From Ruditapes philippinarum (taxonomy: Eukaryota), in contig NW_026859662.1 of the NCBI RefSeq assembly GCF_026571515.1, forward strand, positions 62,001-113,988: a stretch of DNA of 51,988 bases. The letters run 5' to 3'. The notes beneath the pieces were generated by a model. It worked only from the letters and a program-made list of their open reading frames with translations, searched no databases and had not been told where the DNA came from. Made by a program: the position numbers and the translations under genes. How positions within the stretch are numbered: position 1 is the first letter of the stretch; each line of letters starts with the position of its first letter. This document shows, one piece after another, positions 43-47,999 of the stretch.

Positions 43-2811
43 ATTAAGTACACTAGCTGGTCACAAGATGACGAAAGATAATCCGAACATCGCTGACTTG
101 AGTGATAACTACAGACCCACAAATATTGCTGAGCAATTTAGAGAAGTATATGACAATGAGTGGACACAAGCTTATGAAGAACTAGATCAGCATTATCGTA
201 ATGACGAGACGAGAATAATTGACTCTCTTTTGTCGATTTTAAAGGTATTTGTATTTGTAAATTAAGGTATGAGGTGCCTAATGCAAAACCTCCTTAGTTT
301 GAGAAAACTTTTCAATTTAAATGAGTATACAGAGTTTACGTGGGATGTGAGTTTAACCCTGATTGATTGCATTTTAAAATGTTTTCTGCTATTTATTGTT
401 ACTTTGATGTCTTTTCAGATTGTCTTGTCCTTGTCTTTTTTCTGAAAATGTTGAATTAAGAAATATTTGGAAATTGATATGTGCTTTGTATGGTTAAAAT
501 AGTAAAAATAAAGTAGTTTTCCAACTGTCTTTATTGTCAAATCGGGATAGTAAGGCTCCCTTATTCTTAGCTCAAATGTTTAGAATTGCATCTTGATAAT
601 TACCATATGAAGATATAACGATGCCCAATTGATAAAATATATATGACCGGTTTTCTGAACCCATCCTTATTCTATTCTATCAAATCTGACAGATACCTGT
701 TTCAATTAACCTCACTTCTTTCAGATATGCTTTTCTTTGCATTACTTGGATTGTTACGTACCGTTTCTCTGATTAGATTAAGATGAAATATGTTAAAACT
801 CGTCCTTAACTGATCAAAACATATGTGTTGCTGTTGTTGTACTATATAACTGATACAATTGTTTGACTTAAATCATCAATATTTTCAAATCAAGATGGTA
901 AACTTATGTTACCTTTGTGTATTTGTTTAATGAGGTTTTAAATTACATAATATTATATTGCACATTGCGTTCTGAATTTCCAATAGCTTGTTTTTGTTAT
1001 GCCTTTAAAAAGTCGCTTCTATTCTGGATAGTTCCCTTTAAAGCGACCTTCAACATTTATTTTCTGTTTGAAAAACAAGTCTGTGTTGTTTCAGTATTTC
1101 ACATTTTGAATTAATATACAAAGAATTTAACCTTCAGTAAAGCTGAACGCCGCTTTAAAACAGTAGCTTTTTACTACCTGTTTTTAAAACTTATTGTAAT
1201 TATCAAAGAAAGAAAACTGGCCTTAACCTATTAAGCCCAGCTATTCATTTCCTACTTTCCTTTATTTATTCATGACGTTATTTCTTATCATAACATTTAT
1301 TAAAGGACACATTGTCATGACCTAATCCTGATACACTTTCAACACTTTGAATATCGTGGTTATTATTGATTCTATCTTAGATAAACATATTTAATTTTCA
1401 GAACATAGAAGCGTTTTGTGTAGAGGTGTCTTCCCATCAATTTGCTTCACTGAAATCAGCAATTGAAAATGAACTGACCTATCCAAAATATAAACTTGAA
1501 AACGGAACTGTAATGGTAATATAGCGCTTATTATTGATTTGAAAGTTAATCCGCCCGATTGTTTTGAGATTAATCCGCCCACTTGCTCGTGTTATTTAAA
1601 CTTCATATGATAAATCATACAGAGGCATAAACTTCAAAGTAAATATTTTCTATTAATTATCAAATTAAAATTGAATTGTTTATTGTATATTTTTACATTA
1701 TTTCTTCTGTTGATTTTTCTACTTAGGCAGGAAAACATAGAGCCGAAATGTCGTCGTCACAAAAAGACATCGAAGATAAATTTCTGAAGGATTTAAGAAA
1801 ATCGTTAGGTATTTTGTCAACAGGGCCACTAGCACAGGTCTGATACTTGTTTGTTTATTAGGGTATTATATCAGACACATGGCATATTAATTGATTATGA
1901 AAAGCCACTCTAAGTTAATTGAAAAAGTTGCTGTAAATTAATTAAATTGGAACTTTAAAATGTCACTGTAAATTAGTTGAAGATGTCAAATGTCGCTGTT
2001 ACTCGAAAATGTCAGTATAAGTAAGTTTATTGAAAATGTCGCTGTAAGTTAAAAAGAAAGGTTAATTGTCGCTGTTAGTAAACTAACATGTCAGTGTAAG
2101 TTAGTGTCAAATGTCAATGTAAGTTAATAAAAATCCTTTCAGTAAGTTTAATAAAAATGATGCTGTAAGTTTATAGAAAATGTTAAATGTAGCTGTAAGT
2201 ATATTTGAAATGTCAAATGTTAATGCCACACATTGATGTAAGTTTTCTGAAAATGTAAGTTAATAGAAAAATGTCAAATACCACTGTAAGCTATTGACCA
2301 AAGTCTCTGTAAGGTAATAGACAATGTTGCTGTCCAATATCGTACGTTTTCTTTCTTCTTCTGATGATAAACACGAATCTATTTTATCTATTCTCTGCAT
2401 TTTCGATTTATCGTATATCGCACAATTATATATACCGAAATATTATATCATATGCGCGTACATACACGGAAAATACAATTTGGAAACTTTCTTTGCTGTT
2501 TATTGTATGTTTCAGTTTGCTATCACTTTCAGATATTTCATGAAGTCCATATGAAAAAACAGCTTGGAGCTGAGTTTTCTTCGGCTGGTCTTAAAACATT
2601 TATTGTCCAATCTGTAAAACTTGTGTGGATGATGAAGATGCAGACGCCACCGATGGCATTTATCTGGGCGGAACCCAAACAAAATGTTGATAAGAACAGA
2701 TTTACGTTCTATACAAGAAGGGGAGACGTTATCAAGCAATGTATTTGGCCAGCTCTTGCACTACATAAAAATGGGCCTCTTATGTCCAAGGGCATTGTGC
2801 AGGCCGTGTGA
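43..2811 (+). CDS. Mieap/SPATA18 C-terminal-domain protein, array gene 1 (5' part outside window)
   Basis: Exons 43-244 (phase-2 acceptor; LSTLAGHKMTKDNPNIADLSDNYRPTNIAEQFREVYDNEWTQAYEEL...ILK), 1402-1515 (NIEAFCVEVSSHQF...), 1727-1837 (...FLKDLRKSLG...PLAQ), 2533-2811 (...VKLVWMMKMQTPPM...FTFYTRRG...IWPALALHKNGPLMSKGIVQAV*). All introns are GT-AG and in frame. AATAAA at 2906. Family assigned by recalled motif match to the Mieap C-terminus, not by a database search. Confidence 0.88.
1915..2335. repeat. Degenerate minisatellite in the last intron of gene 1
   Basis: Many diverged copies of roughly AAAATGTCGCTGTAAGTTAATTG, spaced about 20-30 bp apart. Confidence 0.75.
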
Positions 2812-3102
2812 TGAAATAACATTTTTGTGATATATAGACTTAAGCTCTAAATATATGCATTATCATATTTTTGTCACTTTCATTTGTTGATTTTCTATCA
2901 TATGAAATAAATAAATGTATAATTTTGATTATGATGATCTTTTAGACTTTTACTTATCCCATTGACTTAACACCATCATAAACGTATACTAACGCATAGC
3001 TGTGCTTCATATGATTCTACATAACACCGAATTATTGCAAAACATACTAAGAAGAAATAGTATGCAAAAATGACTATGCATATCATGAACGTATGCCCTG
3101 AT

Positions 3103-5143: not shown

Positions 5144-7930
5144 ATGGCTAGCACGATGAACAGTAGCAAGTCCGATCAGCTAATAGACGTACTGAAACAG
5201 GTTCAAGCAAGGAAGACTGTTAGACCAGAAGATGCGACCAAAGCTTTACAACAATATTATAAAGTTCAAGAACACATCAAAGCGCTTAAGTCTGAAATAG
5301 AACTGTTCAAAGCGAACCAAGAACAAAAGGTATGTTTCTTTCCGTTAAAAGTGCCACAGATAATTTTGTTCGAGATTCAAATATTATGCTTTCGGGATGT
5401 TGATTGTAACAGGCTTCTTCGTGAAATTATATAATGTTAGGAACAAATGAACATTTTATGTGATTCATTTGTAAAATTAACCAATATTAATTTATCTTTA
5501 ACAAATTATAATTAAAATGCTGGTATATTAAACATAGGAAGGACAAGCACGGCCAATACCTCAAACTAAGGGTAAAGTACCAATAACAAGGAAGAATAGT
5601 ATTAATTCCCAAAACAATGGTAATAATCAGCAAAGCCCACTATCCAGACAACCGCCACGTAATATAAATGGCACAGTACAAACTAACGGAACTTCAGGAG
5701 CATCTTCACGTTCTCCGAGACGTCCGTCAAAGGTTTCGACCACCGATGATGTCAGATCACAAGGGACACAATCTTCTAAACTTGTTACAAAGAATGGAGC
5801 TACAGGAATACCAAAACCAAATAATCCAGACTCACCTGAGAAAGATAAAGAAGTATCTAGATTAAAGCTACCAATTACTCAAACAAAGGTCACGCCAGAT
5901 AATAAAGTGAATAAGTAAGACATTTTAAGGTTATTTCCTATTCAGTTTTTGTAGTTTATGTACGTATTTCTCGTTTATAATATGTTACTTTTCTTATTTT
6001 AAAATCTTAAAATAAAAGAACAGTATGTTTTTTTTGCTTTAAGTAGTATAGAACTTAATCATTAGCTAATAATTTATATTTATATTTAAGATAAATGTTA
6101 CACGAACATCTAAATGATAAATTGTAGTTAGAAAGCCTTTGGCTGTAAACAAAATTAACGCTTAAAGTTTATAGCTTATATATCTTATAGATGAGATGTG
6201 TTTGATTTTGGTCTATGCAGGGAACCAAACGCCGTTGCAGTCATGGAGAACGGAAACAAAGTTACATTGTTACAAAAGCGTGATATACCTGTCCCTGCAC
6301 AATTAGTGGAGGAATTCAAGAAAATATATAACACAGAATACAAGACTGCCTACCATGATCTTGAACATCATTATAAACTAAAGGAAGACAATATTACCGA
6401 ACTACTAGCAGCAATAGCAAAGGTAAAATCGGCTAAGAGATGGCTTTCTTTACTGGTATAGCATTTATTCTCCATAAATTTGCGTTTTGAAGATCTTTCT
6501 CTAAATTTGCATAACAATGGTAGCTACAGATTAAAACTTCATAAAGAAGAATGTTTTATAATCTGTCAGTCACTTTTACCCGTTATTTATCATTAATTTG
6601 CATCGTTTTTTAAAAACATTCACAACTTACTTTGTCCATATAAATGAAAACTTATTCACCAAGCATGATTTCATTTTAATATGTGGCTTCTTATTCAATA
6701 CAATAAAATCTGCCATATTCATTTTAGGAGGCGTATACATTTTGCACAAACACTTCAAAACAACAGTTTGACGACATATTTAAGGCCCATGCTCATGTGA
6801 TAGATGTACTTGTTCAACCAAAATATGTACCGCAAATCAAAGATACAATGGTGAGTAAAAAAGAAACGGAGCACACTGTCATTTTACTTGTTTAAAACTA
6901 GAAATTCTTATTACTCTTTGTTGCAACGTTAATCATTCCACATTACGTCTTTTAATAACACTCTGGACAACAAAATAGCCAAATGGAAGCCTTGTCAATC
7001 TCAAGAAATTTCATTTATCTATTCATTTTATTTTGTTATTTATATGTGATACTCAACAAATTAGGATTAATGCTGCTGTTGTTATCTTCATCACTTTACT
7101 CAAAATTTTTAAAAGTTATTTCTTAACCTGTCAAGTTCATTTCGACATACCGTCGCAGATAAAACGTTATATCTAGTATTTGTTTCTATTTTTTGTAGAT
7201 ACCAAAGTCGAAATCAATAATAGACAAAGAGGGTTATCAAGTTACTCGCAGATTTTTAAAAGATTATAGACGAGCAATGGCCAAGTTTCCCATTCCAGGC
7301 CTTATAGAAGTATACTTTAAATATTTCGTTATTAAAAGAATATAAATATATTTGAAATTACATTGACATGAAGATACCATAAAGTACTTGTACATCTTAC
7401 TGTTGTTATTTATAAACTATCAGTCCTAGATAGAGATATAAGAAGTATTTAAACAAATGTTCATTCATTTTACTGAAATTTCAATCGAAAGCATGTGTAC
7501 TGATACGAAAAATGGTACTTATATTGTAAAAGTCTAGGAAAACAATTTTCAGTTTTATTAAATATACATAACTAAATGTGTAAGATGATAATTATTTTGG
7601 TTGAACAAAAATATGTTAATCAAACTTGATTTTCTTCAGATTTTTGAAACGATAGTACAACGAGATGTTCTAAATCGTCATACAGCATTACGGATTACAC
7701 CAAAGGCATCACGACCATACATTCATCGTCTCATTGAAGTCAGCTGGTATATGAGTATGCACGAACCACCGTTAGTTCAAGTGTGGCCACGTGGTGGCCA
7801 ATTAATGAACAGAGATTGGTTTACACCGTATGGCAAGAAAGGTGCAACAATTATACATACAGTATGGCCAGCATTGCTTGACCATAAAGATGGAACTCTT
7901 GCGGAGAGGGGAATCTGCCTTGTGAAGTGA
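5144..7930 (+). CDS. Mieap-domain protein, array gene 2 (~429 aa)
   Basis: join(5144-5329,5538-5914,6221-6422,6728-6850,7199-7309,7640-7930) is open throughout, with intron phases 0,2,0,0,0. Motifs FKKIYNTEYKTAY, EAYTFC, FLKDYRR, WYMSMHEPP, FTPYGKKG, VWPALL, RGICLVK*. Exon 2 is an S/N/Q/P-rich linker read in a different frame from the supplied ORF 5668-5865. Confidence 0.88.
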
Positions 7931-9936: not shown

Positions 9937-12900
9937 ATGACACAGGCTATGATGCGGGTGATTGAGAAGAAAGGGATTGTAAAGGTTCCTGAGGAATATG
10001 TTCAAAGAGAAAAATTTACGACAAGTTCTCAGCTAGAGGACGATGATGACCTTGTAGCCACTTGTTTAGCCAAGCTCCAAGATGGTATAAAAGTCACTCC
10101 ATTAGAAGCGACAGATGCTCTTAAGCAGTACAGAAAGTTTCAAAATGAAATGGGACGACTACAAACGCTTATCAGCAGACCCTCGGTAATATAGTTTCAT
10201 TTTATATAAATAATGTATTTTTCGACAACAAAGCGTATGTTGACTTGTTTATTTATAACCCATACTTTTTAATGGGAACAAACTTTAAAATGTTAACTGA
10301 GGAACCTTTTTACTTCTTGTTGTTTTGTTGTGTGATTTTTTTTCTTTAATTTTCACATGGACGTCTTCAAAATGCTTGTTAAATACAACAGTACTGTGAT
10401 AAAAGTTATGCAGTTTTGTATCATGCGTCTTTGTTCATTAACATCTGCAAAAGCACGAGGACGCATTTAAAACCCGAGACCGCAGGACGATAGCTTCTGC
10501 AGATGTAAATGTACGAACATGGTGCATATGTGTGGTTCTTGCATGCAAGTACAAATCGGTTATTCCGAGTTTCTGCATCACTTGCATTTCGTATAAAGAA
10601 ACCATTGCTTTTTTTGATATTTTCCATGATTGTGCGCCGTCAGTTGACAATTATGTTTTGGTAATAACTTTACCGGGCCACCATTGCATTAAGCTGTCCT
10701 TAAATTGCCTTGACTTACACAGTCATATTGAAAACGTGCCGCAACGGCGCGAGGTCTATGTTTTTATGTAAGAATCTTATTTAATGGTCTAAATAAGTAT
10801 TTGTAGCATATAGAAAATGAAAACTGTTTGTTTTTTTCAATATACAGAGATATCCGAAGATGACATCTAGCCTTTACATGCAAGAAAAAAGTTTCAAAGA
10901 TAGAACAAAGAAAATAATAGAAGCAAAGGAGAAAGAGATCGTTTCAATGAAACAAAAGGTGACGGAAATGTCTCTCAGGTATTGCTGTCTCATAATTGAT
11001 TTGTCTAATCTTTATCAAGTCACAGAATATGTATTCAAATACGGGGTAATCTGATTTTAATGAGTAGAAACTCAGATAGCCAAGCGGATTTATGTATGTT
11101 CTTTCTCTTCTATCCTTACAGAACGCTAAAACCTGTTGCCAATCTCCATGCATATTAAATTGATACTAGACTTCGCTATCTTTATTCTTGTCTTTTTATA
11201 TCTCGTATCATGAAGTCAGTTTAGTAAGCGCCCCTGGAACCAACATTGAATGCATGTTTTTACTTCCAACGGACAGTCTGTAACTGATATAATGGTATCT
11301 TATACCGCACTCTACAGTACTGTTTATACATTGAAAAGGTCTCCCAGCTATAAAACAAAGAATTTAATTGCATCGAGTACTGACTTCTTTTGCTTTGGAA
11401 AAAAAACCATTGATTTGTTTCAGTGTCTGTAAAAGTTTCAGGTATGGTAAGTTATCGTTTATTAGACATTTTATATTTTACTTTTATATCTTATGCAACA
11501 CAATGGAAATTTACATATCTTGCCTGTTATTGTCAAGTAAACATTATATCTAATGTTCCTATCTATGTAAAGCAGGGTTATCCAATGGTATGTATTTTTT
11601 TTTATTAATTCTCACACATGATGATATCCTCTTCAGATTAAGTGCTATACTCGGTACTCAGGTTGTTGAACCAGATGAGAAGAAAAGTGATCTTACAGAT
11701 AGCATTAAGCCAGTGGATATAGCAGAAAACTACAGAGCAATTTATGATAATGAATACCAAACAGCGTATGAAGAACTTGCAATAGCCCTTGATGAAGCAA
11801 AGGTTTTAGTATATCTTGGCAAAGTAACATGGGTATGTCTAAGGTTTTGTTAATTGTTCGCAAATAAAATGTTATATTATAAATTATTAAATGCATTGTC
11901 AAGTAATAATTTATAGTTTGTCCTATGTTTTTAAAATAGAGTTTGGAAATTTATTTTTATTAAGGATATTCATATAAACTTGAAAGACGATATTGTATCT
12001 TTGCAAAGTAGCATGGGCAGTAACATGGGTATGTTAAAAGTATTGATAGCAACAAATAAGCATTGCATTTACAATAATAATTAATTGTTTGTCTTAAAAC
12101 TTTAAAGAAGAATTTGGTAGAACTTGGATATTTAATCTAGGAAATTCACCAAAACTTCAAGTACGATATCGTACCTTTTTAATTTTTGTGGTCGCATCAA
12201 CACAATTTAGGTCATATAGCTTCACTCTTTACTGGCGGAGAAAGACCTCAGGTGCCCATATGTACATTATTTCAGACACAAACGGGCACCTGAATAGAAC
12301 CACCGCCGCTCCGTAACTTCATTCAATTTCATTTGTGTATGGAAAAGTGAAATGTATTTAGCTAACATGTTTCACACTATCATAAGGCTGCCTATGAATT
12401 CGGAAAAGATATGGCAAAACAGCAACTTGAGGATCTGATGAGAAAGGAAATGGAGATTCTTAAGATAATGTCAAAGCCAAGCTATGAGGAGAAAGAACAA
12501 CGAAAACCAATAGTAAACACATTACGATTTAATATTCTATTTCGTAACGAACACTTGCAAAAGCAAAACTTTGTTACAACTTAACATAACATCTTTATCG
12601 CAATATATTACAACATCTAAATTGATTTTGAACATGTGTCCATTTATTGATACAAAATTCTTTTACTTTATGGTTTCAATTAAAACAAAATGCGTAAATA
12701 CATAAAATATTTACATTCCTCAGGTAGCTGATGGTATTTCAGCCAGAAAGTTTGAGAGGGATGAAACATTACAACTTTTGAAAGACTATCGAAGGTGTCT
12801 AGCTCGGACGTCGGTCCCTGGTGTAAAACAGGTAAATACTAACAGTTACTAGAGCACTACGTACGACGAATTGCTGTTCTCAAGTAGCTTGTTGAACTGA

Positions 12901-14000
12901 CTCTTCTTTTATCAAGCCTTAAATGTTTCATAGATCTTACAATAATTTTTTGTTTTAACAGTTCTTTATTACAGGAAAAAGAGAGAATTTTATTATAATA
13001 AATATTCATAGATAAAAAAACCCAAAGCAACATAGCCGTCATATATTTCTTTGTAATATCTATTTTTTTAAAGATATTTATAACTCTAATGACACGATCC
13101 CCTCCTCAGAAAGGAGGAACATTGACAATTGGTGTGAAGAAGTATATCCTGAAGGTTGTAGAGCAAACGTACTTAATGTGTATACAGGTAAAAATATCAG
13201 TTTTACAGCAATATGATTAACAATTTCAATAAAAAGTCAGAGTAAGAAATTATTATCATAAGATGTTCAAGAAGGCAAATACCTTTTTCTTACTTCAATG
13301 ATTTTTCCATAACTTTTAGTTATTATCATATTAGTTATACGTAAGATTATTTCAAGGTTATATGGCGCTACATAAACAGTTGTTTGCATATATAATTCAT
13401 TAAATTGCGAATAAAAACAACGTTTATATACAACCATATAACCTCTCGGGGTTCTTTATCATAAATTTCTAATACAACAAACTTCTTTTTTAGAGAAAAT
13501 GAGAGATTTTATCGTATATTGACAGTAGTCGTATATATAAAACTATATAAATATCACGCTTGTCCACTTAAAAGCGACGTTACAAACGTGCAGTATTATA
13601 ATTATCCATATAAAGTACGTTTTCAACGACTAATGCAAGAAAGAGACGATATCATTATGTCTCAGTTTCAAATTACTATACATCGTTTAGTTAGTGAATA
13701 AGAAGTTAAAGTGTTTTATTCAATTTTTTTTATGAAAAATAATAGTAACTTCGGTTTGAGTTTTTTCTTTTTTTTGACAGGAGCCTCCAATGTGCCTAGG
13801 TAAGATTTGGAGATATTCTGGACACGGAGAAATACAAGCCCTACTCGGGGGAAGGTAGTACAATTGTTGGGACTATCTGGCCAGTAGTCCTTCGGCACAA
13901 AGGAGGCCCAGTCATGAGTAGGGGTATAGTGGATGTGATGTACGGTCAAATAGCCGAAACAAAATCAGTTACTATACAGAAATACAAACATGATAAATAA
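9937..14000 (+). CDS. Mieap-domain protein, array gene 3; extra intron and frameshift in last exon (possible pseudogene, null allele or assembly error)
   Basis: join(9937-10185,10848-10978,11637-11832,12387-12512,12724-12831,13074-13187,13781-14000). Motifs YRAIYDNEYQTAYEEL, LLKDYRR, YLMCIQ|EPPMCL. The homologous tail GDILDTEKYKPYSGEG..IWPVVLRHKGGPVMSRGIV lies in the +1 frame from 13809; the unshifted frame stops at TAG 13856-13858. Confidence 0.8.
10405..10770. mobile_element. Probable non-autonomous DNA transposon remnant (Crypton-like) in gene 3 intron 1
   Basis: Imperfect hairpin ATGCGTCTTTGTTCATTAACATCTGC...GCAGATGTAAATGTACGAACATGGTGCAT and locally raised GC; superfamily guessed from the hairpin style. 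Confidence 0.4.
11811..12175 (+). repeat. Tandem duplication (~185 bp x2) spanning the gene 3 exon 3 donor
   Basis: TATCTTGGCAAAGTAACATGGGTATGT...AAACTTGAAAGACGATATTGTA is repeated as TATCTTTGCAAAGTAGCATGGGCAGTAACATGGGTATGT...AAACTTCAAGTACGATATCGTA. Confidence 0.75.
12176..12318 (-). mobile_element. Truncated SINE, 3' part (probably molluscan V-SINE/RUDI-like)
   Basis: ACACAATTTAGGTCATATAGC...AAGACCTCAGGTGCCC...CATTATTTCA..GGGCACCTGAATAGAACCACCG resembles a common clam SINE as recalled; contains an internal inverted repeat CAGGTGCCC/GGGCACCTG. Confidence 0.55.
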
Positions 14001-16608: not shown

Positions 16609-19600
16609 ATGCCCTACATACCGCCGGTAACGAGTCCCAACATTGAGAAGTTGATGACGTATTTGAACAAGTCTCAGTGGCATAATGTGTCGGCACATTT
16701 CGCTAGCTATGTACGTAAAGAATATGAAAGTTTCATGGAGAAGCTAGATGATGATGAAGAGGTCTTCCGTAATCTTAGGCTTATGATTGAATATTCAGAA
16801 ATGGGCAGGTTTAGTGAGGCGAAGAATCTTATTGATCGTAGCTTTAACAAAGACACTCAAACATATGATTTCGGCACACTCGCCTAAGTCTTAACCAGAG
16901 CTGAATCATCGATAAGGTATTAATTTTACCTAAACAAGCGGTTTATTAACACATTATCAATATGAGGGTGGGCGTTGAAATTTTTTATCATAGGAATTAT
17001 TATAGTAGCACAAATCAGCTGCGGGTGCTGCGTAAACATTAACAAAGGCTTTATGTAAGAGGAGTTTGCTGTTATGACTCGTACATTTTCCCATTGATTG
17101 ATAAAAAATAGAAATGATTTCACATTAATTTGCAGCAAGCCCGGTGTAAATGTAAAGATGTACTGTAAACCATCATGATTCTCAAATAAGTATCAACGTT
17201 ACAAACGGGCAGAGTTATAATTATTTTGAAGAAAAAAAATAATGAAGCGATTATAGAAGGTCAATGGTCTGATACATGACTGTTTATTCAAATCATTGAC
17301 ATTTGAATTACTGAACGTTTGTAATGTTTATAAAGTTAATATACAAGGCTGCTGTCCATTATTTTCTTCAAATGAAAAAAAACCAAAATGCTGTATTAAA
17401 GAATTAGTTTTAAAAATTTTGGCATGGTATGTGGTAGAGTATAACCGGCTGCAAGCCTATATGATTCCTGCCGCTATTTATACTTGACCATATAAGCTGT
17501 CAAACGTCTTTTAAACTAATGATATGTGAAGTAATGTACGAGGTGATAACATATATGTCTTTTTGGAAGTATGATGTTCTTTAGTTTACATATATACATA
17601 CACTTTTTGTCGTGTCACTTACATTCACTCACAAATTGTTTCAGTTCTAAAGAAAATAAAAAAAGAATTTTCATTCCTACCTACCTATTTCTATGAAATG
17701 GAGACATCCCTGTCACATTCCAGTAACTTTGATGCCATATTTATACGAGCCTTTTTTCTTTAATTTAACTCATAATCAAAATGAATGACATTAATGTTGT
17801 GTTCTGTAATTCATGTCAGTTAAATAATATCACACACTGTTATTGAGACAGATTTCCCCAAGACGACCGCCGCATAGACCAGTTGAACATCAAGATCATT
17901 ATAACCGACGTGATGCATATACCCCTGATAGACGAGATCTAGCTACTCCACCAAAACGTTCTACAAACCCACGTGAAGATCATACTCGTGGCAACCCAGG
18001 ATATGAAACACCTAAAAGACATGAGGTAATTTGAAATTTGTCCGGGGCCAGCAAAATCAATTCTTAACTAGTCTGTCAATTCATTAGCTTAAATGTCTTC
18101 AAATTACTTTCACGATATGTGCAGATTCTAATATCTCTTGGTATATTTGATATCAGGAAGTCACCCATCTTGAATACGGAAATCACGTGACTCTTAATTC
18201 AGTGTCTTACCGTGTTTTTTTTTCCTCAACACGAAAGCTTCATATTCGCCGTATGTCCTATGCTGAGTAGTTATAGCACACACAGGCACAAATGAACATT
18301 GTTAAATATTGTTTGTTGCACACAAGAAAGATTCAATCATAACCTAGATATAGCTGAGATATTTCTTAGATATTTATCACATACCTTCTTGTAATATGTA
18401 ACGGACGTGTTTTAATGTTACATTTCTTTTTTATATCTTGAGACAAATTACAGAGTAGAAATTCGGTTTGAATGATAAAGATATGAATGATGTATTTTAA
18501 TATAGGAAATACACGACAGACATCCAAGAACACCTCAATATCAACATGATCAAGGTCCTCAATATGATATACATAGGGTGAGTCATAAATAAGGTCACTT
18601 GATAAGTTATTTTATTAATAAGATAAATTACGCGTACCTTTTCATAATTTTCATTCCGTATTTGTATTTTTCTTTCGTTTTAGAATAGCGTAACTTTTAT
18701 GCATCATTTTACATTATAAAGTAAAAGCACTATACCGAATTTGTGTTCATTCATTCATAATTTTTCAGGTCATATTTCTTTCACTCGAATCGGCCCTTAA
18801 TTTGCCTTGTCCGTTTTCATATCTTCAACATTTTGTGAAGCACATACTGGCCCGTTTTATTATAAGCTGTCCAAGTGTATTCTCATTAAAATGTAAGTAT
18901 CTTTTAATAGAAAAATACTTTTAAATACTAAATTTAAATTTTAAATGTTTTAAATTTTTTATCTAAGATATTGATATCTTTCTTACCATAGCAAAATTAT
19001 GAAAATCTCCGACTAAAGACACCTGAGCAACCAATGAAATACGACTCGACGGGAAATGATTCACATGACGTACATGGCAGCCGACCCAACAGTCATCGTG
19101 CAGACAGGCAAACACCACCTGTGTCTGGAGTTCTCACTAGCGCATCCCAGATGACGTCATCAAAGGCACTCTGGGGTCGTGATTTTGGGGACAAACCAAG
19201 CGAAAAAGTTGGGTCCAGTACATACAGGCAGGATTTCCCAACGTATGCTTTAGACCATCATGAACGTAAAGACAAGGAAAGATATAGAGAAAACTTCGGT
19301 TCGTTAGCTGAAAGAGATATTTATCGCCGAGATAGCGATGATGGTTCAATCCAGGGAGATCAGAGGTAGGTATTACGTCAGTATTTACAGATATAATTGA
19401 TTTTCAAAAACACTTTTTTCAAATGTTGTTTCCATTTCTTCCTAACGCTTTTAATCTTGATATATTAATTTTCTATTGTTCGAAATCACATAACTTGCGA
19501 TATATCAATGAAAATCATTTTCAACACAGAAAAATTTCATCACATTGTTTCGTTTACGGATGCAAAATGTGATTTTTTAAAAAAAATGTTTCATGACGTT

Positions 19601-27400: not shown

Positions 27401-28138
27401 TTGATCTGTCAGCAAATAGTATGTAAATAATAAAATGCTAACATAAACTGATTACTTACTGCCATTTATTTCAAAAGTATACAATTCGTAATTACCATTT
27501 TATACAGGTGCAGTAAATACAGTTAATATTGACAACAATATTACGTTACATGGTGTTTGTCGACACTTCAAATTATCCTGCGTTTAGCTCTCTATCTTGG
27601 ATTTTTTTGTACATCACCTATTGTTGTTTTTTCTCCTTTGACTGAGAGGAGTTAAAAAAAAATAGCCAAGCAGATCCTTTTCCTGAAAGATGTATTGCAA
27701 TTTGCCAATGTATTAAGTTTTATACTTAACATTATGATTAAATGGAGCACGCTCTAATATTGCTGTTCTTCATAAACAGACTACAAGTAAACACATTTTC
27801 AAAATTAAAAGCACGAGTTGTGTCTTGACTTGCAGGAGATAAGACGTGCGATCGCATCTGAACTTGGAACATCTCTGCCAAGAAGATTTACAGGGATCGG
27901 TAACCATTTTGTTGACTATGCCGAGAAGTGTATTGAAGTTATATGGTTAATGTATGTACACGACCCACCTATGCATCTGGAATGGTTGACCAGGGAGCAA
28001 GAGGGGACGTCATTTAAAACTGATTTATACATGTCCTATACGACACCTGGAACTTTATACGATTATTGTGTCTGGCCAGTTGTACGTCTTCATAGGAATG
28101 GCCCTATTTTGTGCAAAGGAGTAGCACAAGGGAAATAA
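24492..28138 (+). CDS. Mieap-domain protein, array gene 5 (~407 aa)
   Basis: join(24492-24782,24947-25155,25660(or 25666)-25861,26346-26444,27269-27388,27836-28138), phases 0,2,0,0,0, open frame. Motifs FTEIYKNEWKSAYNEL, MLVDYRR, YAEKCIEVIWLMYVHDPPM, YMSYTTPG, VWPVVRLHRNGPILCKGVAQGK*. Confidence 0.88.
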
Positions 28139-30491: not shown

Positions 30492-30607
30492 TATAAATAT
30501 CTGGAAATAAAGTGATCCCTCGGAAGCATTAATCACAACAAAATTACAAGAGAATTGCAGACTCGGTTTGATTGAGTCTGTTCATGAGGGATAATGAAAA
30601 TGTGCAA
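30492..30607. repeat. Dispersed repeat unit, near-identical (inverted) to the insert at 40681-40776
   Basis: About 4 mismatches over ~96 nt versus the reverse complement of 40681-40776, by manual alignment. Confidence 0.85.
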
Positions 30608-33678: not shown

Positions 33679-36600
33679 ATGGACACAGAATGTGCAATCG
33701 AACGTGTTTTCGCTACCATAGAGATGAAAAAAGTAGCAAGTCTTGATGATGTTTGCATTAACAACGCAGAAGCAGAGGTAACCTTATTAAGAAATGAGAA
33801 ACTAAACTCTAACGCAGAGAAAACTTTTAAGATCGTCGATGAGATTGTAAAGAAAGTTTCTCAACGTGAGTATAATTTAGCCAAGGAAAAATACACCAAA
33901 GAGATACATTTAAAAAGAGACTTTGCTAAGCTGCTCAAGAAATATTTAGTAAAGGTAAGCATACATTTTACCCAAGTCTTGTGGAATAACACGTTTTTGA
34001 TTAAAAGAAAACAACTGTACGATTATTTACTGAAGGTATTTAAGGAGATATTTTTATAAGTTAAATGAATAAATAATGCTGTCTTTTTCAGCTTGGTAGA
34101 ACAGCATTTAAAACTAGATATTCATTTATTAAAAGTTATATATCTTTAACAGAAATACAAAGACTCAAATTTAACAAAAGTTAAAGAAAACAAAATAATA
34201 TGATATATTTGTGTGTGCGTGCGTGCGCGCGCGTTCGTTGGTGCGTGCGTGTGTGTGTGCGTGTGTATGTGTGTGTGAATTAGTACATGTATAGTAAAAA
34301 TTATTTAACTCCGTACTGAATAATTCAAGGAAGTAGATACGACCTCTTATTTCCGTGAAAAATATAAATAGATTCTTATATTGGTATATTTTACACACCT
34401 GACCTATTATGTACACATCTGTATTAAAGATTTAAGTTACTATACTAACATACTAAGCACGTTTTAAGTAAAATACAGGAGAACATAGATTATATATGAA
34501 TGTATACGGTTAGATGTCTGAAAAAAGCAGATGATTTTAATTCATCTTTTGGATTTGATTTATATGAATATTTCTTAGATCGATTTTACTAGAGGGCGAA
34601 TTATATGAGATGGACCGAATTACTTTAACGATAAGCTCCACACGCTTAGCTGATTATGGAGAACATAAAATTAGAAATTCATCGGCTACTAGTCTGATCC
34701 TTGGGCGAGACGAAGTTACTATAATTATGGCAACTGTTCTCGGACATTGTTTCTATGGTCATTTGCCTCTCACCTCTGATTCAGTTATCATGTCGAATTA
34801 GTTAGTACTCGGTAAATACTGGTTAGTTATCCAGGTTGAACAAAAATGTGTTAAAATCGGCTTCACAACCAGAAAAACACAGAAAAGAACAAAAATGTAA
34901 CACGGTAAATACGTAAACATAGCGTTTTACATAGTTCAACACCATGATTCTGTTGTAATATAAAATACTTTTAAAAACGAACTAATAGATACGACATTGA
35001 CTGGCTGACTAAATTAGAAAAAACGTGTATGTTATATGAATCAATAGAGAGGTATCGCACATAAAATTAATAATGCAGCATAGAGGGAATTGCCGGATTT
35101 TAGAAAGATATGTATTTTATACATACATGCTTTATGGTGTTAAAACTGGAGACAATATTCATTGTATCATACCCATTTCTAAATGAATCGCACATTAATT
35201 GTGTTTATTATGTGTAAAGATAATTTCAAATACTACTATCATATGCAGCTTTCGGTTATTTCATTACTCAATGATAGTTCCTAATGGTTTCATCTTTTTC
35301 TTCGAGAATAACAACAAAGGCGGTGCCGCTGAACATCAGTTACGTGAGGAACCAGAGCCCGATTATGATCAACCACCAAACAATAATGAAAGAAGTTTAC
35401 AAAGTGATGGCCAACAAAGTAGCAGAAATATTCAGGATCATGCAAAAATAAACGCAGCAGCAGCTGAAGAATATGATAGACAGAGAGGGTAAATTTTGCA
35501 ATAGTACTCTTAAAAAATTGCTTTAGACATGATGAACACACCAAATAGCTTTTCTAACTGTTAATGCCATCATATTCGAACCGACTTGACTAGACACGAC
35601 CGTAACTATGTGCCAATAATGAAGTCAAGTATATGAAAATGAAAAGAAATCACATAATGAAAAAATGATCGTGTTTTCGGAATTCCTTGTTAATTTAAAG
35701 GAATATATAAAATTTATAACCAGATATGTTAAACTTGTTAAAATGAGTCGCGGATTATTTTTGCCCATCTCCAATTTTAAGATGGGGTTTGTCCATTTAC
35801 CCCAATGCTTAGCTTGTTAAAATATGCAAATCAACTGGATTCACAATTAAACATACGCATTTTTCTTTTGAAGAGTTGCCTGTCGAGTTCAATATGTAAT
35901 GATAGTGAGCGCATTATTTCTTCATCATACCATATAAAAGAGTATGCAATATCCTCGAGAATTATTTTGCTAAAATTCTACCTTTACAATTTTAGACAGA
36001 AAGCTAGCCAGGCGATGAGGCACAACAACCCGGATATAGCGGATCTAAGTGATCATAACAGACCAACCAAAATTGCTGAACGCTACACACAATTCTATGA
36101 CAACGAATGGACAACAGCTTTTGAAATATTAAGTGAGAAAAAGAAAACTGAAGAAAAGAAAATAACACAACTTCTTTTGGAAATAATTGAAGTAAGAAAG
36201 CGACAGTAGTACATGTAGTTATTCTGTTTCACCATATTCTTTATGTGTAGAATAATTTGAATTGTAATTTTTCTCTGTAACTGTATCATAAAGAAAGGCA
36301 AAGAATCCTATTGTAATATGATGTTTCCTTTCTTATCAATTTGCGCTGATCTGCCTTTTGTTTGATAAGATTCTGAATAAGTTATGTAAATATTTAATTT
36401 TATTATCCTTATTTTTATTTTAATTTGCAATGCACTGTGATTTTTTTTGTCATTATATCAACTGTTTTATTTTCTTGAAAACAGTACATAAGTGAAAATT
36501 AAATGATAACAAAACAAAGTTTTATTAAGACATGGTTATAATCTATTCAAATTCATCGATTAATTTGAAGCTAGAAATGAAATGATGTATTTAGATATAT

Positions 36601-37934
36601 TTACTGCATATTAGACAACTGTTTACTAGGTTTAAGACTGATAGATGCAGCTCTAATATAAGCCCAGTATTTGTACATAGCAACGAGATAGTGTCAGATT
36701 CCGGTTGTGTGATTTTAGTCATATACATAACACTGCATTTTGTATTATAAACAATGTTTCAATGTTCCAGGAGGCATACATTTTCACAAAGAAAGAGGCT
36801 GAGAAACAGATACTTAAGATGAACTCGACCATTATGAATATTTTGGAAAGTGGAGATACGAAAGGGAAACCCTCAGTAGTAAGATTTTTATATTAAATCT
36901 TATCTCATATAACTACGGTATTCTATTCGGGCCATCCTGATAGATGCATAATTCGAAACAGCGAAAACACGGAAAAGGTTGATAAATGTCGAAATAACGA
37001 AACCACGAAAAACCCCTTTTTTAATTGATTTTTTATCGTCGTTTATGCACTCAAAACTGATTGTACTGATACATCAAGTTGTTTATATTTCTAATAGGAA
37101 GACTTATTCATATGTCTTTCTTTATGAATCAAGACATTTCGTCCTTAATATTCACTGATGTTAATTAAATTTTATTTCATACAGAAAGACATGCAAAATG
37201 ACGTAAGCTTGTTAGTCCAGTTTCGCAAACAGCATGCAGAAAGGTCCATAAAAAGATTACAGGCAGTAAGTTTTATTTATAAATACGTATATTCTACATT
37301 TCAAACAACAACTTGTCAAGAAACTTGTAGTTAGAGCTAACCAAATTCTCGTCAAGTAATTGACGGAATGTTATAATATTTCTCATCAAGTTAAATTTGT
37401 CGAAACCTTACTTTTTTCCTGTTTTATGTGTTTTTGACTGACAATTACATCAAACATTGTGTTTGTAAAGAGAGAATCTAGCATAAGTGATTGTTTCTAA
37501 AATATTACTATTGATTTAAGTTATAACACATGCTTTATTCTGTTTTGATATTTACAATGCAATATTTTTTTTGAAAAGATAATAGAACAGGCCTATGAAA
37601 TAGGATTGATGAGTATTTATCTGTGTATTCTTTTTCAAATTCAAAGAACTTTGCTGTCGAGGTAAGAAAGATGTGTACCAAAGTTGTAAGTGGGAAGCCG
37701 CCTACAGATAAGAGTGTAATGATAACATATGGTAACAAAGCTGTAGAACTTACATGGTGGATGTGTGTACAAGATCCCCCTGTTTACATGGTAACATCTC
37801 GAGACAAATTCAACCCCGATTTCTACAGGGCTTATACCAAATCAGGAACTATCCCAGACTTTTATGTCTGGCCGCCATTGAAGCTGCATAAAAGTGGTGG
37901 TATATTGGCAAAGGGTGTTGTACAGTACAAATGA
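33679..37934 (+). CDS. Mieap-domain protein, array gene 6 (~376 aa)
   Basis: join(33679-33954,35307-35488,35996-36191,36771-36878,37185-37265,37647-37934). Motifs NNPDIADLSDHNRPTKIAERYTQFYDNEWTTAFE, EAYIF, LLVQFRK, VELTWWMCVQDPP, YRAYTKSG, VWPPLKLHKSGGILAKGVVQYK*. The exon 2 acceptor is an uncommon GAG, so its 5' edge is less certain and further small linker exons cannot be excluded. Confidence 0.87.
34210..34277. repeat. (GT)n/(GC)n compound microsatellite in gene 6 intron 1
   Basis: TGTGTGTGCGTGCGTGCGCGCGCG...GTGTGTGTGCGTGTGTATGTGTGTGTG. Confidence 0.9.
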
Positions 37935-42144: not shown

Positions 42145-42345
42145 TGTGGTGGCATGGCCGTGTGACTAGTATCTTAATGATCGCTAGCCGCATGGGTTCA
42201 AACCCCGTTAGGCGCAAGCCGTTCTTTCCTTGAGCAAGAAACTTTACACTCATTGCTAAGTACGTACTGGTTGGTTCCAGGAACGGATTCGAAAGTGTCT
42301 ATAAGCTTATAGCTTCATACACAATCAAACTTAAATAAATTCTGT
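42145..42345 (+). mobile_element. tRNA-derived SINE nested in the foldback element
   Basis: A box TGGCCGTGTGA (~42155), B box GGGTTCAAACC (~42194), CORE-like TCCTTGAGCAAGAAACTTTAC, then AGTACGTACTGGTTGGTTCCAGGAACGGATTCGA and an AT-rich tail. Confidence 0.7.
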
Positions 42346-44976: not shown

Positions 44977-47900
44977 ATGGAACCATGGGGAAATTTTGGT
45001 ATTTCGAAGCTTATGTCTGGTGTTGAGAAAGGAATGTCATCGGATTTGAGGAATCTTTGTTATGAGGCAGAAAAGGATGTCAGCATGATAGAAAGAAAAA
45101 TTCAGTTAGGACACAGGAAAAAGATAGAACCAATTAAAAAATTGATCGATGATGTTGCTCATATGAGAGTATGTAAGCGAGAAGAGGTGAAGGAAGTGCT
45201 ATCGATATTTAACGAATACGTAAAACCATTCTTGGAGGTATATATATTATACTATTTATGTGTTGAGTTAAACAAAGAGTTGCTAAATTGTTTCCAATTA
45301 GCCGGTTTTTTTATATAATACAGGGTAGAAGAACTACAACTCCCGGTGTGGGTTTGTTTTGTATACAAAATGTATTTAAATAAAAGCCTAAAAACATAAA
45401 TACTTAAAAACTTTTTGTCACAGTTCTCATGTCACCGACTCTCAAATTCATATATCAAGTTAAACTGTATTAATTAATTAACACGCTGTTAATACATTAA
45501 CAATTGTATATTACCTGTTTTTAAGGAGGAAGAAAGAACAAAATCTGATATTGATAAAGGCTCAAAGAAAGATCCTGTTAACAAAGATGATGATAACTTC
45601 AGTGGAACAAACGAGAATGAGAAACAAAAATTAGATAATAATACCCTACAAACAAAACATCTTCAGGATATGAACACGTAAGTTCAGATAATACAGTGAT
45701 TATACGAATTATGCGTGTAAAAAGCTTTTCGTGCCATGCACTTATGTAGTTAACGATACTGTAGGACCATTGTATTTTTTGAAAATTTTAAACAATATTG
45801 CGAGACTATTCAAAAGATATACATGTAATATGTCTTACCCAAAATATATTCAATGAATTAAATTTGAAAATGTGTTTTTTCCTATCTGAAAAGAAAAGAA
45901 AATGGCACTCCACATTCATTGTCATATATTTTATTGTGTCAGAGAGATGCATCAGATATATATTTACATTATACATAGTTTGTATCTAAAACATAGTATT
46001 TTTTTTTTTTCAAAAGGCTATCCCCCAACACTCCTTTAAACAATACTTGGATACGGTACATTTTAACACATTTTTGTTGTTTAACTTCAGATCAATAAAA
46101 AGAGGAATAGACGGACTTGTTGATGCATTTCGAGAGCTTTTCTTGAATGGTCATTGGAAAAAACTGTTTGATGATATCTCGAAACGCACAAATTCCCAGC
46201 ATCTGAGCACTGAATGCATTATGGAAATAGTAAAGGTAAAAAATTTAAAAATATAGTATATGAAAGATGTAAGAGTATCTTTATCTTGATGTTTTTTTAC
46301 CGGTGACGAGTGGATTTTGCCAGAGGCGCGGCGGCACCATGTATTACTTTTTAAAAATATTTATATATCCAAATTATCTAATTAGAAATGGACAAAATTT
46401 GCAATATCTTATCTTACTTATGATATTCGAACGTGTTCAGATTATCTAGAGAGGCTTTTATTGTATATAAAGGTCTGGATGTGCTAGATAAAAACATACA
46501 GGTGACTCTTACATATATTGCCCTGCTTCTTCTCGTATTTTAAACTGACTGCTAAATTTCTATTCATTACATAAGCAATTAACTTATATTCAACAGAAAG
46601 CGTTTAAAATAAGTAAGATTGAGGCTGCCAAACAGATTAGTAATGCAAGACAGTGTGCAAAACAGATAGTAGAGACTGGGGAGACTGAGGATGTACGTAT
46701 ACATACTCAGATTTATCTTTATACCTTCTATTACTTTGCATTGTATTAAATCTGTGAAGTTAAAATCTAAATGTTATATGTCAGACACATATTAGTGTGT
46801 TTATGCAGTACCATAGAAATCAGGAAAAAAATGATAAATTAATTGCTAAAGAGATGATAAATGTGTAACACCTCTCACGCCTTTTAGTGGAGTTTATCTG
46901 TTAATATTTAAAACGTATTGGATATTATATTCTAAAGGAACTGTTATTCTAACAATATTTACTGTACCCTAATCACAATCATAGGGACGTTTCAGACGAG
47001 TTTCGTGTAACATGTGTTTTTTATATCTGAAAATATTTGTGCAAATTCCATTAATCAGTGTGTTCGAAAAAATTAATTAATTGTCCTTTACTTTCTGAAG
47101 GTGTCTACTGACGATATCCATTCTTCAAAGCATATGGAATCCTCAGACGAACTTCTTCGTAGATATAGATATATACATGCAGATATGTCAACAGAAAGGC
47201 TTCAAGGAGTAATGTTCATTTCCATATATTTTTTCATTTTTAATAAGTGTAATTTTAAACAGTGCGAAAAATGTTTTGATCCAAAAGGAATTATTGTGTA
47301 TTATTGTCTGCCAATTAACATATTGAAGGTAGAAGATTAATTCAAACAGTACTCCTAATTAATTGTAAGTGTGCCTTTAAATTGTATTTAAAAGTCTAAT
47401 TTTAAGAGCATACTCCAGTTCTTAAACTAACAAATACAGGCGTCGTATGAAGAAACGTGGTGGTAACCTACAGGTGTCGAATCCACAATCCCTGTACTGA
47501 TAGGCTTACAAATTCACCACTACGCCACCGCTTCCCTTTAAATGATTATTTTGAATTCCTTAATTTCGGCTTTTTAAATATGTTTGTATGAAAAGGTAAT
47601 TCTTCAAACTTAAATGGTTTTAAAGAAAATCCATTTGATTGTTTTAATTATCAACACATTGCCTGTAATCCTATTTTGAACATAATGACAATGCTTGTAT
47701 TCTCTTTATTTCAGCTTCTTTTACAAAAAGTTAAAACATTCCTTTTTAAAACTTACAATATTGAGACGGAAGAGAATATAAATCTTGCATTGTTCATACG
47801 TGATTGTGCTGCCATAACATGGTTAATGTGTGTTGAGGACCCACCAATTGATATGGTATATGACAAATGTTCAGACAGAATGGACGAGAACAAATATGAC

Positions 47901-47999
47901 ATTATAAAAGGAAAACCATTTAAAAACATTGTGTGGCCTGCATTACAATTTGAAGGCACTGGAAGCATGTTATCAAAGGGAGTAATATGGTGTAAATAG
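44977..47999 (+). CDS. Mieap-domain protein, array gene 7 (~348 aa, most divergent)
   Basis: join(44977-45237,45526-45677,46091-46235,46597-46692,47101-47208,47715-47999), phases 0,2,0,0,0, open frame. Motifs FRELFLNGHWKKLFDDI, LLRRYR, FIRDCAAITWLMCVEDPPIDM, IVWPALQFEGTGSMLSKGVIWCK*. Confidence 0.86.
47442..47537 (-). mobile_element. tRNA-derived SINE head in the last intron of gene 7
   Basis: Reverse complement reads GGGAAGCGGTGGCGTAGTGGTGAA...GTGGATTCGACACC (A and B boxes) but does not close into a cloverleaf. Confidence 0.6.

What the first reader, a model, noticed from the sequence alone, without database searches (positions are those of the whole stretch)
43..47999. Tandem array of at least seven highly diverged Mieap-domain genes with one shared exon plan
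Seen: seven co-oriented genes with matching intron positions and phases and a recognisable C-terminal domain, but no obvious intron similarity and low protein identity. Known: vertebrate Mieap/SPATA18 is a single p53-inducible mitochondrial quality-control gene. Inference: this is an old, maintained, lineage-specific expansion with a different modular design (helical N-domain, variable linker, Mieap domain). The birth-and-death pattern is typical of invertebrate innate-immunity or stress-response families, making it the best candidate for an undescribed system here. The sequence alone gives no function.
Basis: partly seen in the sequence, partly recalled or inferred. Interest (0 to 1): 0.85.

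Follow-up and report, generated by a model that had tools for sequence, protein, structure and literature searches.

The report
Old seven-gene Mieap-like array, bivalve
This is a real row of seven very old, highly diverged copies of a "mitochondria-eating protein"-like gene in a bivalve genome; the family is already known to be hugely expanded in bivalves, so the array is an ordinary member of a known but functionally unstudied expansion.

Summary
Observation confirmed. Seven co-oriented (+) multi-exon genes lie between 43 and 47999. Each ends in an exon that matches Pfam MIEAP (PF16026) or, for gene 3, a family HMM built here. Predicted introns are all GT-AG, with phases 0,2,0,0,0, and fall at the same domain positions. 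Paralogues share 18-36% protein identity and no detectable DNA similarity.

Interpretation partly supported.
- The duplications are ancient. Gene 5 has colinear orthologues in Mya, Dreissena and Mactra (69-76% overall, 85-87% in the last exon). An AU test rejects one clade for the seven (p 1e-42).
- The expansion is not undescribed. Regan et al. 2021 report about 53 Mieap genes per bivalve. This genome has at least 149 MIEAP hits in many tandem clusters. The scan already holds about 15 notes on Mieap arrays elsewhere in this genome.
- The design (helical N-terminus, disordered linker, C-terminal MIEAP domain) matches human Mieap rather than differing from it.
- Nothing here shows recent birth-and-death or immune function.
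- Gene 3 lacks a conserved core motif.

The MIEAP domain models confidently (pLDDT 88.6) as four long helices plus a beta cap, with no significant PDB match. GrpE is only a weak lead.

Function remains inferred by homology.

The parts
43..2811 (+). Gene 1, 3' part (MIEAP-domain exons E3-E6); its first two exons lie upstream of the window
   Evidence: Exons 43-244, 1402-1515, 1727-1837, 2533-2811 (GT-AG, phases 2/0/0/0). Terminal exon Pfam MIEAP E 1.7e-12, 48.2 bits. E3 Pfam positions 1-42, E 0.0045. Candidate first exon and acidic linker at contig C8149 55.0-56.7 kb.
5144..7930 (+). Gene 2, six coding exons
   Evidence: Exons 5144-5329, 5538-5914, 6221-6422, 6728-6850, 7199-7309, 7640-7930; phases 0,2,0,0,0. 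Terminal exon Pfam MIEAP 32.2 bits. Exon 2 is hydrophilic low-complexity sequence (GRAVY -1.32).
9937..14000 (+). Gene 3, seven coding exons; atypical or possibly decaying copy
   Evidence: Exons 9937-10185, 10848-10978, 11637-11823, 12387-12512, 12724-12831, 13110-13187, 13800-14000. An extra phase-0 intron splits the last exon. The W-x-M...DPP segment and first beta strand (HMM positions about 170-183) are absent. No Pfam hit; family HMM E 1.6e-10.
16609..22577 (+). Gene 4, with an extra linker exon and a tandemly duplicated exon 4
   Evidence: Exons 16609-16808, 17848-18025, 18992-19365, 19615-19789, 20245-20340 or 20807-20905, 21848-21958, 22269-22577. Terminal exon Pfam MIEAP 44.9 bits. 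79% identical to an unnamed Logan protein, P0164.
24492..28138 (+). Gene 5, six coding exons; the best-supported model
   Evidence: Exons 24492-24782, 24947-25155, 25690-25861, 26346-26444, 27269-27388, 27836-28138. Colinear with the Mya arenaria models P0151/P0001 at 65-86% per exon, with exon ends matching alignment ends. Orthologues in Dreissena and Mactra. Single copy in the assembly.
33679..37934 (+). Gene 6, six coding exons
   Evidence: Exons 33679-33954, 35307-35488, 35996-36191, 36771-36875, 37185-37265, 37647-37934 (the last acceptor could also be 37662). Terminal exon Pfam MIEAP 36.8 bits. Groups with P0028 and P0092 from other species, support 96/93.
44977..47999 (+). Gene 7, six coding exons; the most divergent copy
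   Evidence: Exons 44977-45237, 45526-45677, 46091-46235, 46576-46692, 47131-47208, 47715-47999 (the exon 5 acceptor could also be 47101). Terminal exon Pfam MIEAP 38.9 bits. Long branch, unplaced in the tree.

Best explanation
Shown:
- The window holds a tandem array of seven anciently duplicated paralogues of the bivalve-expanded Mieap-like family (Pfam PF16026).
- In the five genes whose first exons could be modelled on the common plan (2, 3, 5, 6, 7), one exon encodes a 60-100 residue helical N-terminal region. One or two exons encode a strongly hydrophilic, disordered linker of variable length. Four exons encode a C-terminal MIEAP domain of about 210-225 residues. Genes 1 and 4 share the four domain exons and a hydrophilic linker exon.
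- The domain models as four long helices capped by a small six-strand beta subdomain. That subdomain carries the family's invariant Trp-Pro and Gly and the near-invariant Lys and Gln.
- There is no signal peptide or transmembrane segment, so the proteins are intracellular.

Inferred, by homology with human Mieap/SPATA18 only:
- They act as self-assembling scaffold or adaptor proteins.
- The conserved C-terminal domain binds a common ligand. For human Mieap the proposal is mitochondrial phospholipid (cardiolipin or phosphatidic acid).
- The divergent N-terminus and linker set oligomerisation, condensate behaviour and partner choice.
- The paralogues would then be long-standing subfunctionalised variants in mitochondrial or cellular stress quality control.

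Gene 3 has lost a core motif and may be non-functional.
For: - Pfam MIEAP hits above cut-off on six terminal exons.
- Full-domain hit (profile 2-193, 41 bits) in the gene 5 orthologue P0151.
- All 73 aligned relatives hit MIEAP.
- Shared intron phases and positions.
- AF2: P0151 has helices at 4-85, low-confidence stretches at 90-110 and 120-183, and a structured domain at 188-384. The domain alone (P0001) gives pLDDT 88.6, pTM 0.84.
- Linker exons have GRAVY -0.95 to -2.24 (five of seven below -1.3) and 65-84% disorder-promoting residues.
- Conserved columns are mostly hydrophobic or structural plus Lys/Gln/Tyr, with no catalytic-looking set.
- Age and constraint: gene 5 is 76/72/69% identical overall to Mya/Dreissena/Mactra and 85-87% in the last exon. 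Window genes sit in separate starred clades with other species. Monophyly is rejected, p-AU 1.4e-42.
- Human Mieap architecture and the proposed lipid-binding C-terminal half: PMC10845071.
- MIEAP-annotated proteins are detected and change abundance under cadmium in Dreissena (PMC11036304). The Pfam domain is enriched among gill-expressed genes of a mussel (PMC5549309).
Against:
- The mechanism rests wholly on transfer from one vertebrate protein at low identity.
- These genes are not the SPATA18 orthologue. Other loci score far higher: C6225 90.9 bits and C6085 69.8 bits. Those two also branch apart in the tree.
- No solved structure resembles the domain significantly: Foldseek best E 0.4, VIA best Z 7.2. 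The ligand is therefore unknown.
- No full vertebrate-type p53 response element; half-sites are at or below the shuffled expectation.
Confidence: 0.55

Rival explanations
1. One reading: the array belongs to a fast-turnover (birth-and-death) innate-immunity or stress-sensor family. Diversified paralogues would recognise different pathogen or damage signals.
For: - Tandem arrays and very low paralogue identity.
- The family is expanded together with immune and stress families in bivalves (PMC8382680).
- Elsewhere in this genome there are near-identical copies, for example L019/L029/L030 and L017/L020/L026, which suggests recent births or haplotigs.
- Gene 3 looks degraded.
- A RING/B-box TRIM-like gene lies about 18 kb upstream of gene 1.
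Against: - Within this array there is no recent duplicate and no DNA-level similarity.
- Gene 5 is kept as an orthologue across Myida and Venerida, with 85-87% identity in its last exon.
- Genes 1, 4 and 6 also pair with other species' sequences.
- No signal peptide, immune domain or hypervariable patch was seen.
- The most variable parts are disordered linkers, which diverge quickly without selection for diversity.
Confidence: 0.15
2. The MIEAP domain is a GrpE-shaped co-chaperone: a nucleotide-exchange factor or regulator for Hsp70-type ATPases such as the HSPA12 family, which is also hugely expanded in bivalves.
For: - GrpE/GrpEL1 chains are the family that recurs most often near the top of the Foldseek lists for both models (rank 2 for the full-length model, rank 1 for the domain). 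They are the only VIA hits spanning both the helices and the beta cap: 4ani_A Z 6.3, 103 aligned, rmsd 4.3; 9bls_B Z 6.0; 1dkg_B Z 6.0.
- HSP70 and Mieap are both ancestral bivalve expansions.
- HSPA12-like ORFs share 3 contigs with MIEAP hits. One lies 7 kb from, and head-to-head with, a MIEAP gene on C6085.
- Unchecked earlier scan notes propose the same idea.
Against: - All fold scores are in the noise range: Foldseek E 0.4-1, probability <=0.21, TM 0.2-0.3; Z under 8 is common for helical models.
- Pfam GrpE hits only 3 of 73 relatives, best E 0.24.
- No contig carries both a PF00012 hit and a MIEAP hit.
- No Hsp70 or HSPA12-like sequence exists anywhere on this 114-kb contig.
- With 993 HSPA12-like candidates genome-wide, three shared contigs may be chance.
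Confidence: 0.06
3. Much of the array is transcriptionally dead. The open frames would be relics and only one or two copies (for example gene 5) are functional.
For: - No RNA evidence was obtainable.
- Gene 3 lacks a core motif.
- Several acceptor sites have weak polypyrimidine tracts and alternatives.
Against: - At 18-36% identity the copies are far too old for unconstrained frames to stay open. With about 31% GC, a random 95-codon frame stays open with probability about 5e-4 (my own estimate from base composition).
- All 42 predicted exon pieces are stop-free with GT-AG borders.
- Invariant family residues are kept in six of seven.
- Genes 1, 4, 5 and 6 have orthologue-like partners in other species.
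Confidence: 0.07

Closest known systems
Bivalve-expanded Mieap-like family (orthogroup OG24 of Regan et al. 2021, Genome Biol Evol, PMC8382680; proteins named 'Mitochondria-eating protein (C-terminal domain-containing protein)' in UniProt for Mya, Dreissena, Sinanodonta, Potamilus and Magallana)
   Same: - Same Pfam domain and same three-part architecture.
- Gene 5 has named orthologues in Mya arenaria (WAQ97966 / XP_052794082), Dreissena polymorpha (DPMN_106874) and Mactra antiquata.
- Tandem clusters occur genome-wide.
   Different: Nothing essential. This array is one locus of that family. New here are the locus-level anatomy (exon plan, phases), the demonstration that neighbours in the array are ancient lineages, and a confident domain model without a PDB match.
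Vertebrate Mieap / SPATA18 (p53-inducible mitochondrial quality-control protein; condensate-forming scaffold for cardiolipin metabolism, PMC10845071)
   Same: - C-terminal PF16026 domain.
- Hydrophilic N-terminal half with helical or coiled-coil segments and disordered regions, followed by a structured C-terminal half.
   Different: - These are not orthologues: other loci in this genome match the Pfam model far better.
- The proteins are shorter: the gene 5 orthologues are 385-459 aa, against 538 aa for human Mieap.
- Seven highly diverged copies sit side by side instead of one gene.
- No vertebrate-type p53 element was found.
- Localisation, lipid binding and condensate formation are untested.
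GrpE / GrpEL1 nucleotide-exchange factors of Hsp70
   Same: Overall arrangement of long helices followed by a small C-terminal beta domain. GrpE is the recurrent but non-significant top family in the fold searches.
   Different: - No sequence relationship.
- Scores are within noise.
- The MIEAP helices form an intramolecular four-helix bundle, whereas GrpE's bundle is built across a dimer (established knowledge of GrpE structures).
- No Hsp70 gene lies on this contig.

Membership tests
Pfam MIEAP (PF16026) domain family | Match to the Pfam HMM above the gathering score (27 bits) | tested here: met
   Terminal exons alone score 48.2 (g1), 32.2 (g2), 44.9 (g4), 36.2 (g5), 36.8 (g6) and 38.9 (g7) bits. 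g3 has no Pfam hit and matches only a family HMM built here (E 1.6e-10). So the feature is met for six genes and not for gene 3.
Pfam MIEAP (PF16026) domain family | Whole domain present (profile positions about 1-195), not just the C-terminal part | tested here: met
   Tested exon by exon because spliced models were not joined. E3 matches positions 1-45 in g1, g4 and g5 (E 0.0045-0.034). On the family HMM, E3 covers positions 2-54 and E6 covers about 128-227 in all seven, with E4 and E5 between them. The full-length gene 5 orthologue P0151 covers profile 2-193.
Pfam MIEAP (PF16026) domain family | Conserved motifs W-x-M-x(3,4)-P-P and V-W-P-x-L ... G-x-x-L-x-K-G (invariant P, W-P and G in 63-73 relatives) | tested here: met
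   Both motifs are present in g1, g2, g4, g5, g6 and g7. g3 keeps only the second.
Mieap/SPATA18 orthologue (single-copy p53 target) | Best reciprocal relative of SPATA18-type sequences within the genome | tested here: not met
   C6225 (90.9 bits) and C6085 (69.8 bits) match the Pfam model much better than any window gene (at most 45.7 bits in that search). Those two loci branch apart from all window genes. No vertebrate SPATA18 sequence was available for a direct tree.
Mieap/SPATA18 orthologue (single-copy p53 target) | p53 inducibility, mitochondrial localisation, cardiolipin-containing condensates | not testable with these tools
   The only test was a consensus scan: no full p53 element, and 6 half-sites against 9.3 +/- 3.0 in shuffles. 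This is weak because the consensus is vertebrate.
GrpE nucleotide-exchange factors | Sequence match to Pfam GrpE (PF01025) | tested here: not met
   3 of 73 relatives, best E 0.24. These hits probably come from coiled-coil N-termini.
GrpE nucleotide-exchange factors | Significant fold match covering both the helices and the beta domain | tested here: inconclusive
   Foldseek E 0.4-0.9, probability <=0.21. VIA Z 6.0-6.3 over 103-105 residues, rmsd 4.3-6.3. This is below the level that separates true relatives from common arrangements.
Birth-and-death immune or stress multigene family | Recent duplicates, lineage-specific copies and turnover at the locus | tested here: not met
   No nucleotide similarity between the seven genes. 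Gene 5 DNA is single copy. Orthologues exist across orders. The array is polyphyletic. Only gene 3 hints at decay. Recent copies do exist at other loci of the family.

The most novel reading that the evidence does not exclude
The MIEAP domain is a GrpE-like module, and the bivalve Mieap-like proteins are a diversified set of co-chaperones (nucleotide-exchange factors or regulators) for the equally expanded Hsp70/HSPA12 ATPases. This would also reinterpret vertebrate Mieap as an Hsp70-linked factor. My evidence neither supports it above noise nor excludes it.
Probability: 0.06. Interest if true: 0.75.

Novelty: new member of a known kind. Interest (0 to 1): 0.3.

Why it matters
Bivalves carry dozens to more than a hundred Mieap-like genes where most animals have one. 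Nobody has tested what the extra copies do.

This locus shows that neighbouring copies are ancient and individually conserved. One copy is 85-87% identical in its C-terminal exon across bivalve orders. That points to long-standing division of labour rather than rapid turnover.

The domain models confidently but resembles no solved structure, so one experimental structure and one ligand assay would inform both the bivalve family and human Mieap. As a genome feature, however, the array is what a specialist would expect from the published expansion.

Tried and rejected
No spliced-read test, tissue profile or presence/absence test was possible.
- Spliced models were never joined for any search. 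Exons were searched one by one, by reference. Full-length analyses used the public Mya orthologue P0151/P0001.
- L003 and L007 were tried as possible intronless full-length copies. They are terminal exons with long Gln-rich C-terminal extensions and were not usable.
- Fold searches of the full-length model returned only generic helical hairpins for the N-terminus.
- Complex prediction with an HSPA12-like ORF of this genome (residues 119-688) and the MIEAP domain P0001 gave 'no answer' (score 0.00). This is no evidence either way.
- Contig-level linkage of PF00012 hits with MIEAP hits: none shared. With an HSPA12-like protein query, 3 contigs are shared, but only 65 of 993 candidates were scored, so this is inconclusive.
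- p53 response-element scan: nothing above chance.
- tRNA and Rfam scans of the window were empty.
- Pfam on the N-terminal exons gave only sub-threshold hits: DUF6565 at 21.7 bits for gene 4, and PMBR. I did not use them.
- A full-text search for 'PF16026' found no paper.
- The species could not be named. Gene 5 is about equally distant from Mya, Dreissena and Mactra, which suggests another heterodont bivalve.
Full report
**What is there.**
The window is G000:C8149:62001-113988. It is AT-rich (about 31% GC), has no N, and reaches the end of a 113,988-base contig in a 1.41-Gb assembly.
- An all-against-all BLASTP of every open frame finds two recurring + strand exon families.
- The first is a C-terminal exon at 2371-2808, 7592-7927, 13800-13997, 22269-22574, 27809-28135, 37599-37931 and 47592-47996.
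- The second is an upstream exon, found by BLASTP at 32-262, 6195-6458, 11554-11850, 19604-19834, 25637-25921 and 35781-36206. Gene 7's copy, at 45990-46253, was placed by position and a weak HMM match.
- Pfam scores six of the C-terminal exons above the MIEAP (PF16026) gathering score. The genome-wide search hit the same six.
- The seventh, gene 3, is recognised only by its paralogues and by a family HMM I built.
- The upstream exon matches the first 45 positions of the Pfam profile in three genes, below threshold.
- No other MIEAP-like frame exists on either strand of the window or in the 62 kb of contig upstream. The array has exactly seven members on this contig and may continue past its end.

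**Gene models.**
I placed exon borders from open frames, GT-AG sites and frame continuity.
- The common plan has six coding parts: a first exon with the ATG, a linker exon, and four exons (E3-E6) for the MIEAP domain.
- Intron phases are 0, 2, 0, 0, 0.
- On a family HMM numbered as in the Mya arenaria protein P0001, E3 ends at 54 in six of seven genes; gene 3 extrapolates to 51.
- E4 begins at 55 in six of seven; gene 7 extrapolates to 48.
- E5 ends at 127 in six of seven; gene 1's weak alignment gives 147.
- E6 begins at 124-133.
- Gene 5 is the best supported. Its six exons align end to end, in order, with the Mya models P0151, P0001 and P0152 at 65-86% identity, and exon ends coincide with alignment ends.
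- Gene 1 is cut by the window edge. A candidate first exon and an acidic linker lie at contig positions 55.0-56.7 kb.
- Gene 4 has an extra linker exon, a phase-2 first intron and a duplicated exon 4.
- Gene 3 has an extra intron inside the last exon and lacks about 14 residues that hold the W-x-M...DPP motif and the first beta strand.
- All of this is prediction.
Exons were searched singly.

**Divergence and age.**
- Summed over E3-E6, paralogues share 18-36% identity.
- First exons align only weakly, and no pair of genes gives a blastn hit at E<=1e-3, in exons or introns.
- Gene 5's DNA is single copy in the assembly, apart from an interspersed repeat in intron 4.
- Gene 5 has orthologues in Mya arenaria, Dreissena polymorpha and Mactra antiquata. 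Identity is 76, 72 and 69% overall, and 85-87% in the last exon for all three.
- A maximum-likelihood tree of the last exon (51 rows, 96 columns) places the window genes in separate groups.
- Genes 4 and 5 are sisters, each with its own partner from another species (99/92).
- Gene 6 groups with two other-species sequences (96/93).
- Genes 1-3 group with a copy from contig C10372 and two other-species sequences (96/94). Genes 2 and 3 join each other on long branches, which the tree tool flags as possibly false.
- Gene 7 sits alone on a long branch.
- An AU test rejects a single clade for the seven: delta lnL 155, p 1.4e-42.
- The neighbours are therefore old lineages, not a recent local burst.
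- All 42 predicted exon pieces are stop-free despite this age. That argues for purifying selection on at least six of the genes.

**Family context.**
- PF16026 gives at least 149 matches in this genome (202 candidates, 150 scored), mostly in clusters of 2-7 per contig, for example C12669, C10372, C5923 and C756.
- Two loci, C6225 and C6085, match the profile far better than any window gene. They branch apart from the window genes and are likelier SPATA18-type genes.
- C6085 appears to share the E3-end border and a terminal exon starting near the same position. The exon plan therefore looks ancestral to the family rather than special to this array.
- The expansion is published. Regan et al. 2021 list a Mieap orthogroup of 807 genes, 53.1 per bivalve against 0.6 in other species, with duplications in the bivalve ancestor.
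- Family members are named 'Mitochondria-eating protein' in UniProt for several bivalves.
- The Pfam domain is enriched among gill-expressed genes in a mussel atlas.
- MIEAP-annotated proteins change abundance under cadmium in Dreissena.
- I found no functional study of the expanded copies.
- The scan's own notebook already holds about 15 first-reader notes on Mieap arrays elsewhere in this genome.

**Structure and mechanism.**
- The AF2 model of the full-length orthologue P0151 shows helices at 4-85, low-confidence stretches at 90-110 and 120-183, and a structured domain at 188-384.
- The domain alone (P0001) models at pLDDT 88.6 and pTM 0.84. It has four long helices followed by six short strands.
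- Linker exons are strongly hydrophilic: GRAVY -0.95 to -2.24, and 65-84% disorder-promoting residues.
- This is the layout reported for human Mieap, where the N-terminal half has coiled coils and disordered regions. Its structured hydrophobic C-terminal half is proposed to bind cardiolipin-type lipids in condensates.
- Conserved columns are mainly hydrophobic, plus Pro, Trp, Gly, Lys, Gln and Tyr. That looks like a binding module rather than an enzyme.
- My best reading is a Mieap-like scaffold. A conserved C-terminal binding domain is joined to a divergent assembly and partner region.
- The domain assignment is shown. The function is inferred.

**The GrpE lead.**
- No solved structure matches significantly: Foldseek best E 0.4, VIA best Z 7.2 on generic helical bundles.
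- GrpE/GrpEL1 recurs at or near the top of the Foldseek lists. It is the only family aligned across both helices and beta cap (Z 6.0-6.3), but that is within noise.
- Pfam GrpE does not match.
- No contig carries both a PF00012 hit and a MIEAP hit.
- An HSPA12-like query shares three contigs with MIEAP hits, including a head-to-head pair 7 kb apart on C6085. However, only 65 of 993 candidates were scored.
- This contig has no Hsp70-like sequence at all.
- The complex test gave no answer.
- I keep this as the novel case at about 6%.

**Verdict.**
The array is a new, well-resolved locus of a known, published, functionally unstudied bivalve expansion. Interest is modest.

Noticed in passing
window 20245-20340 and 20807-20905: Gene 4 carries two tandem copies of exon 4 (32 and 33 codons, both phase 0/0, alignable end to end). 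They could be mutually exclusive exons or both be included.
   Followed up: partly
window 40394-42872: Satellite-like arrays of a 21-bp unit with a palindromic CCTACGTAGG core. They occur in direct and inverted orientation, with higher-order periods of 85, 104 and 306 bp, between genes 6 and 7. A 96-bp piece recurs at 30492-30587 (97% identical).
   Followed up: no
window 3103-3568: Self-complementary block of 22-bp repeats just downstream of gene 1 (74% identity over 488 bp to its own reverse complement).
   Followed up: no
window 26662-27139: An interspersed repeat of about 480 bp inside intron 4 of gene 5. The 40 scored matches elsewhere in the genome are all copies of it at 78-83% identity (3110 first-look candidates for the whole 3.8-kb query), so it is probably a SINE- or MITE-like element.
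   Followed up: no
window 49333-49554: Tandem repeat with a 21-bp unit (10.5 copies) in the 4 kb between gene 7 and the contig end.
   Followed up: no
L034 (G000:C8149:35153-37548, + strand): Two long open frames with a C3HC4 RING motif and a B-box-like Cys/His motif. This is a TRIM-like gene about 18 kb upstream of gene 1. A ribosomal protein S3a-like exon lies at C8149:26672-27049.
   Followed up: no
G000:C6085:126198-127244 (-) and 134573-138651 (+): An HSPA12-like open frame lies 7 kb from, and head-to-head with, a high-scoring MIEAP gene. Two other contigs (C4942, C9370) also carry both families within 24-32 kb.
   Followed up: partly
L003 1507-2766 and L007 1456-2793 (G000:C4090): MIEAP terminal exons that read on into C-terminal extensions of about 350 residues with long Gln/His runs. 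This is a different architecture from the window genes.
   Followed up: no
L019/L030 (C12669) with L029 (C13070); L020/L026 (C12669) with L017 (C13070): Nearly identical terminal exons within one contig and between two contigs. These are recent tandem duplication of a two-gene unit, or haplotigs. The family does have young copies elsewhere.
   Followed up: no
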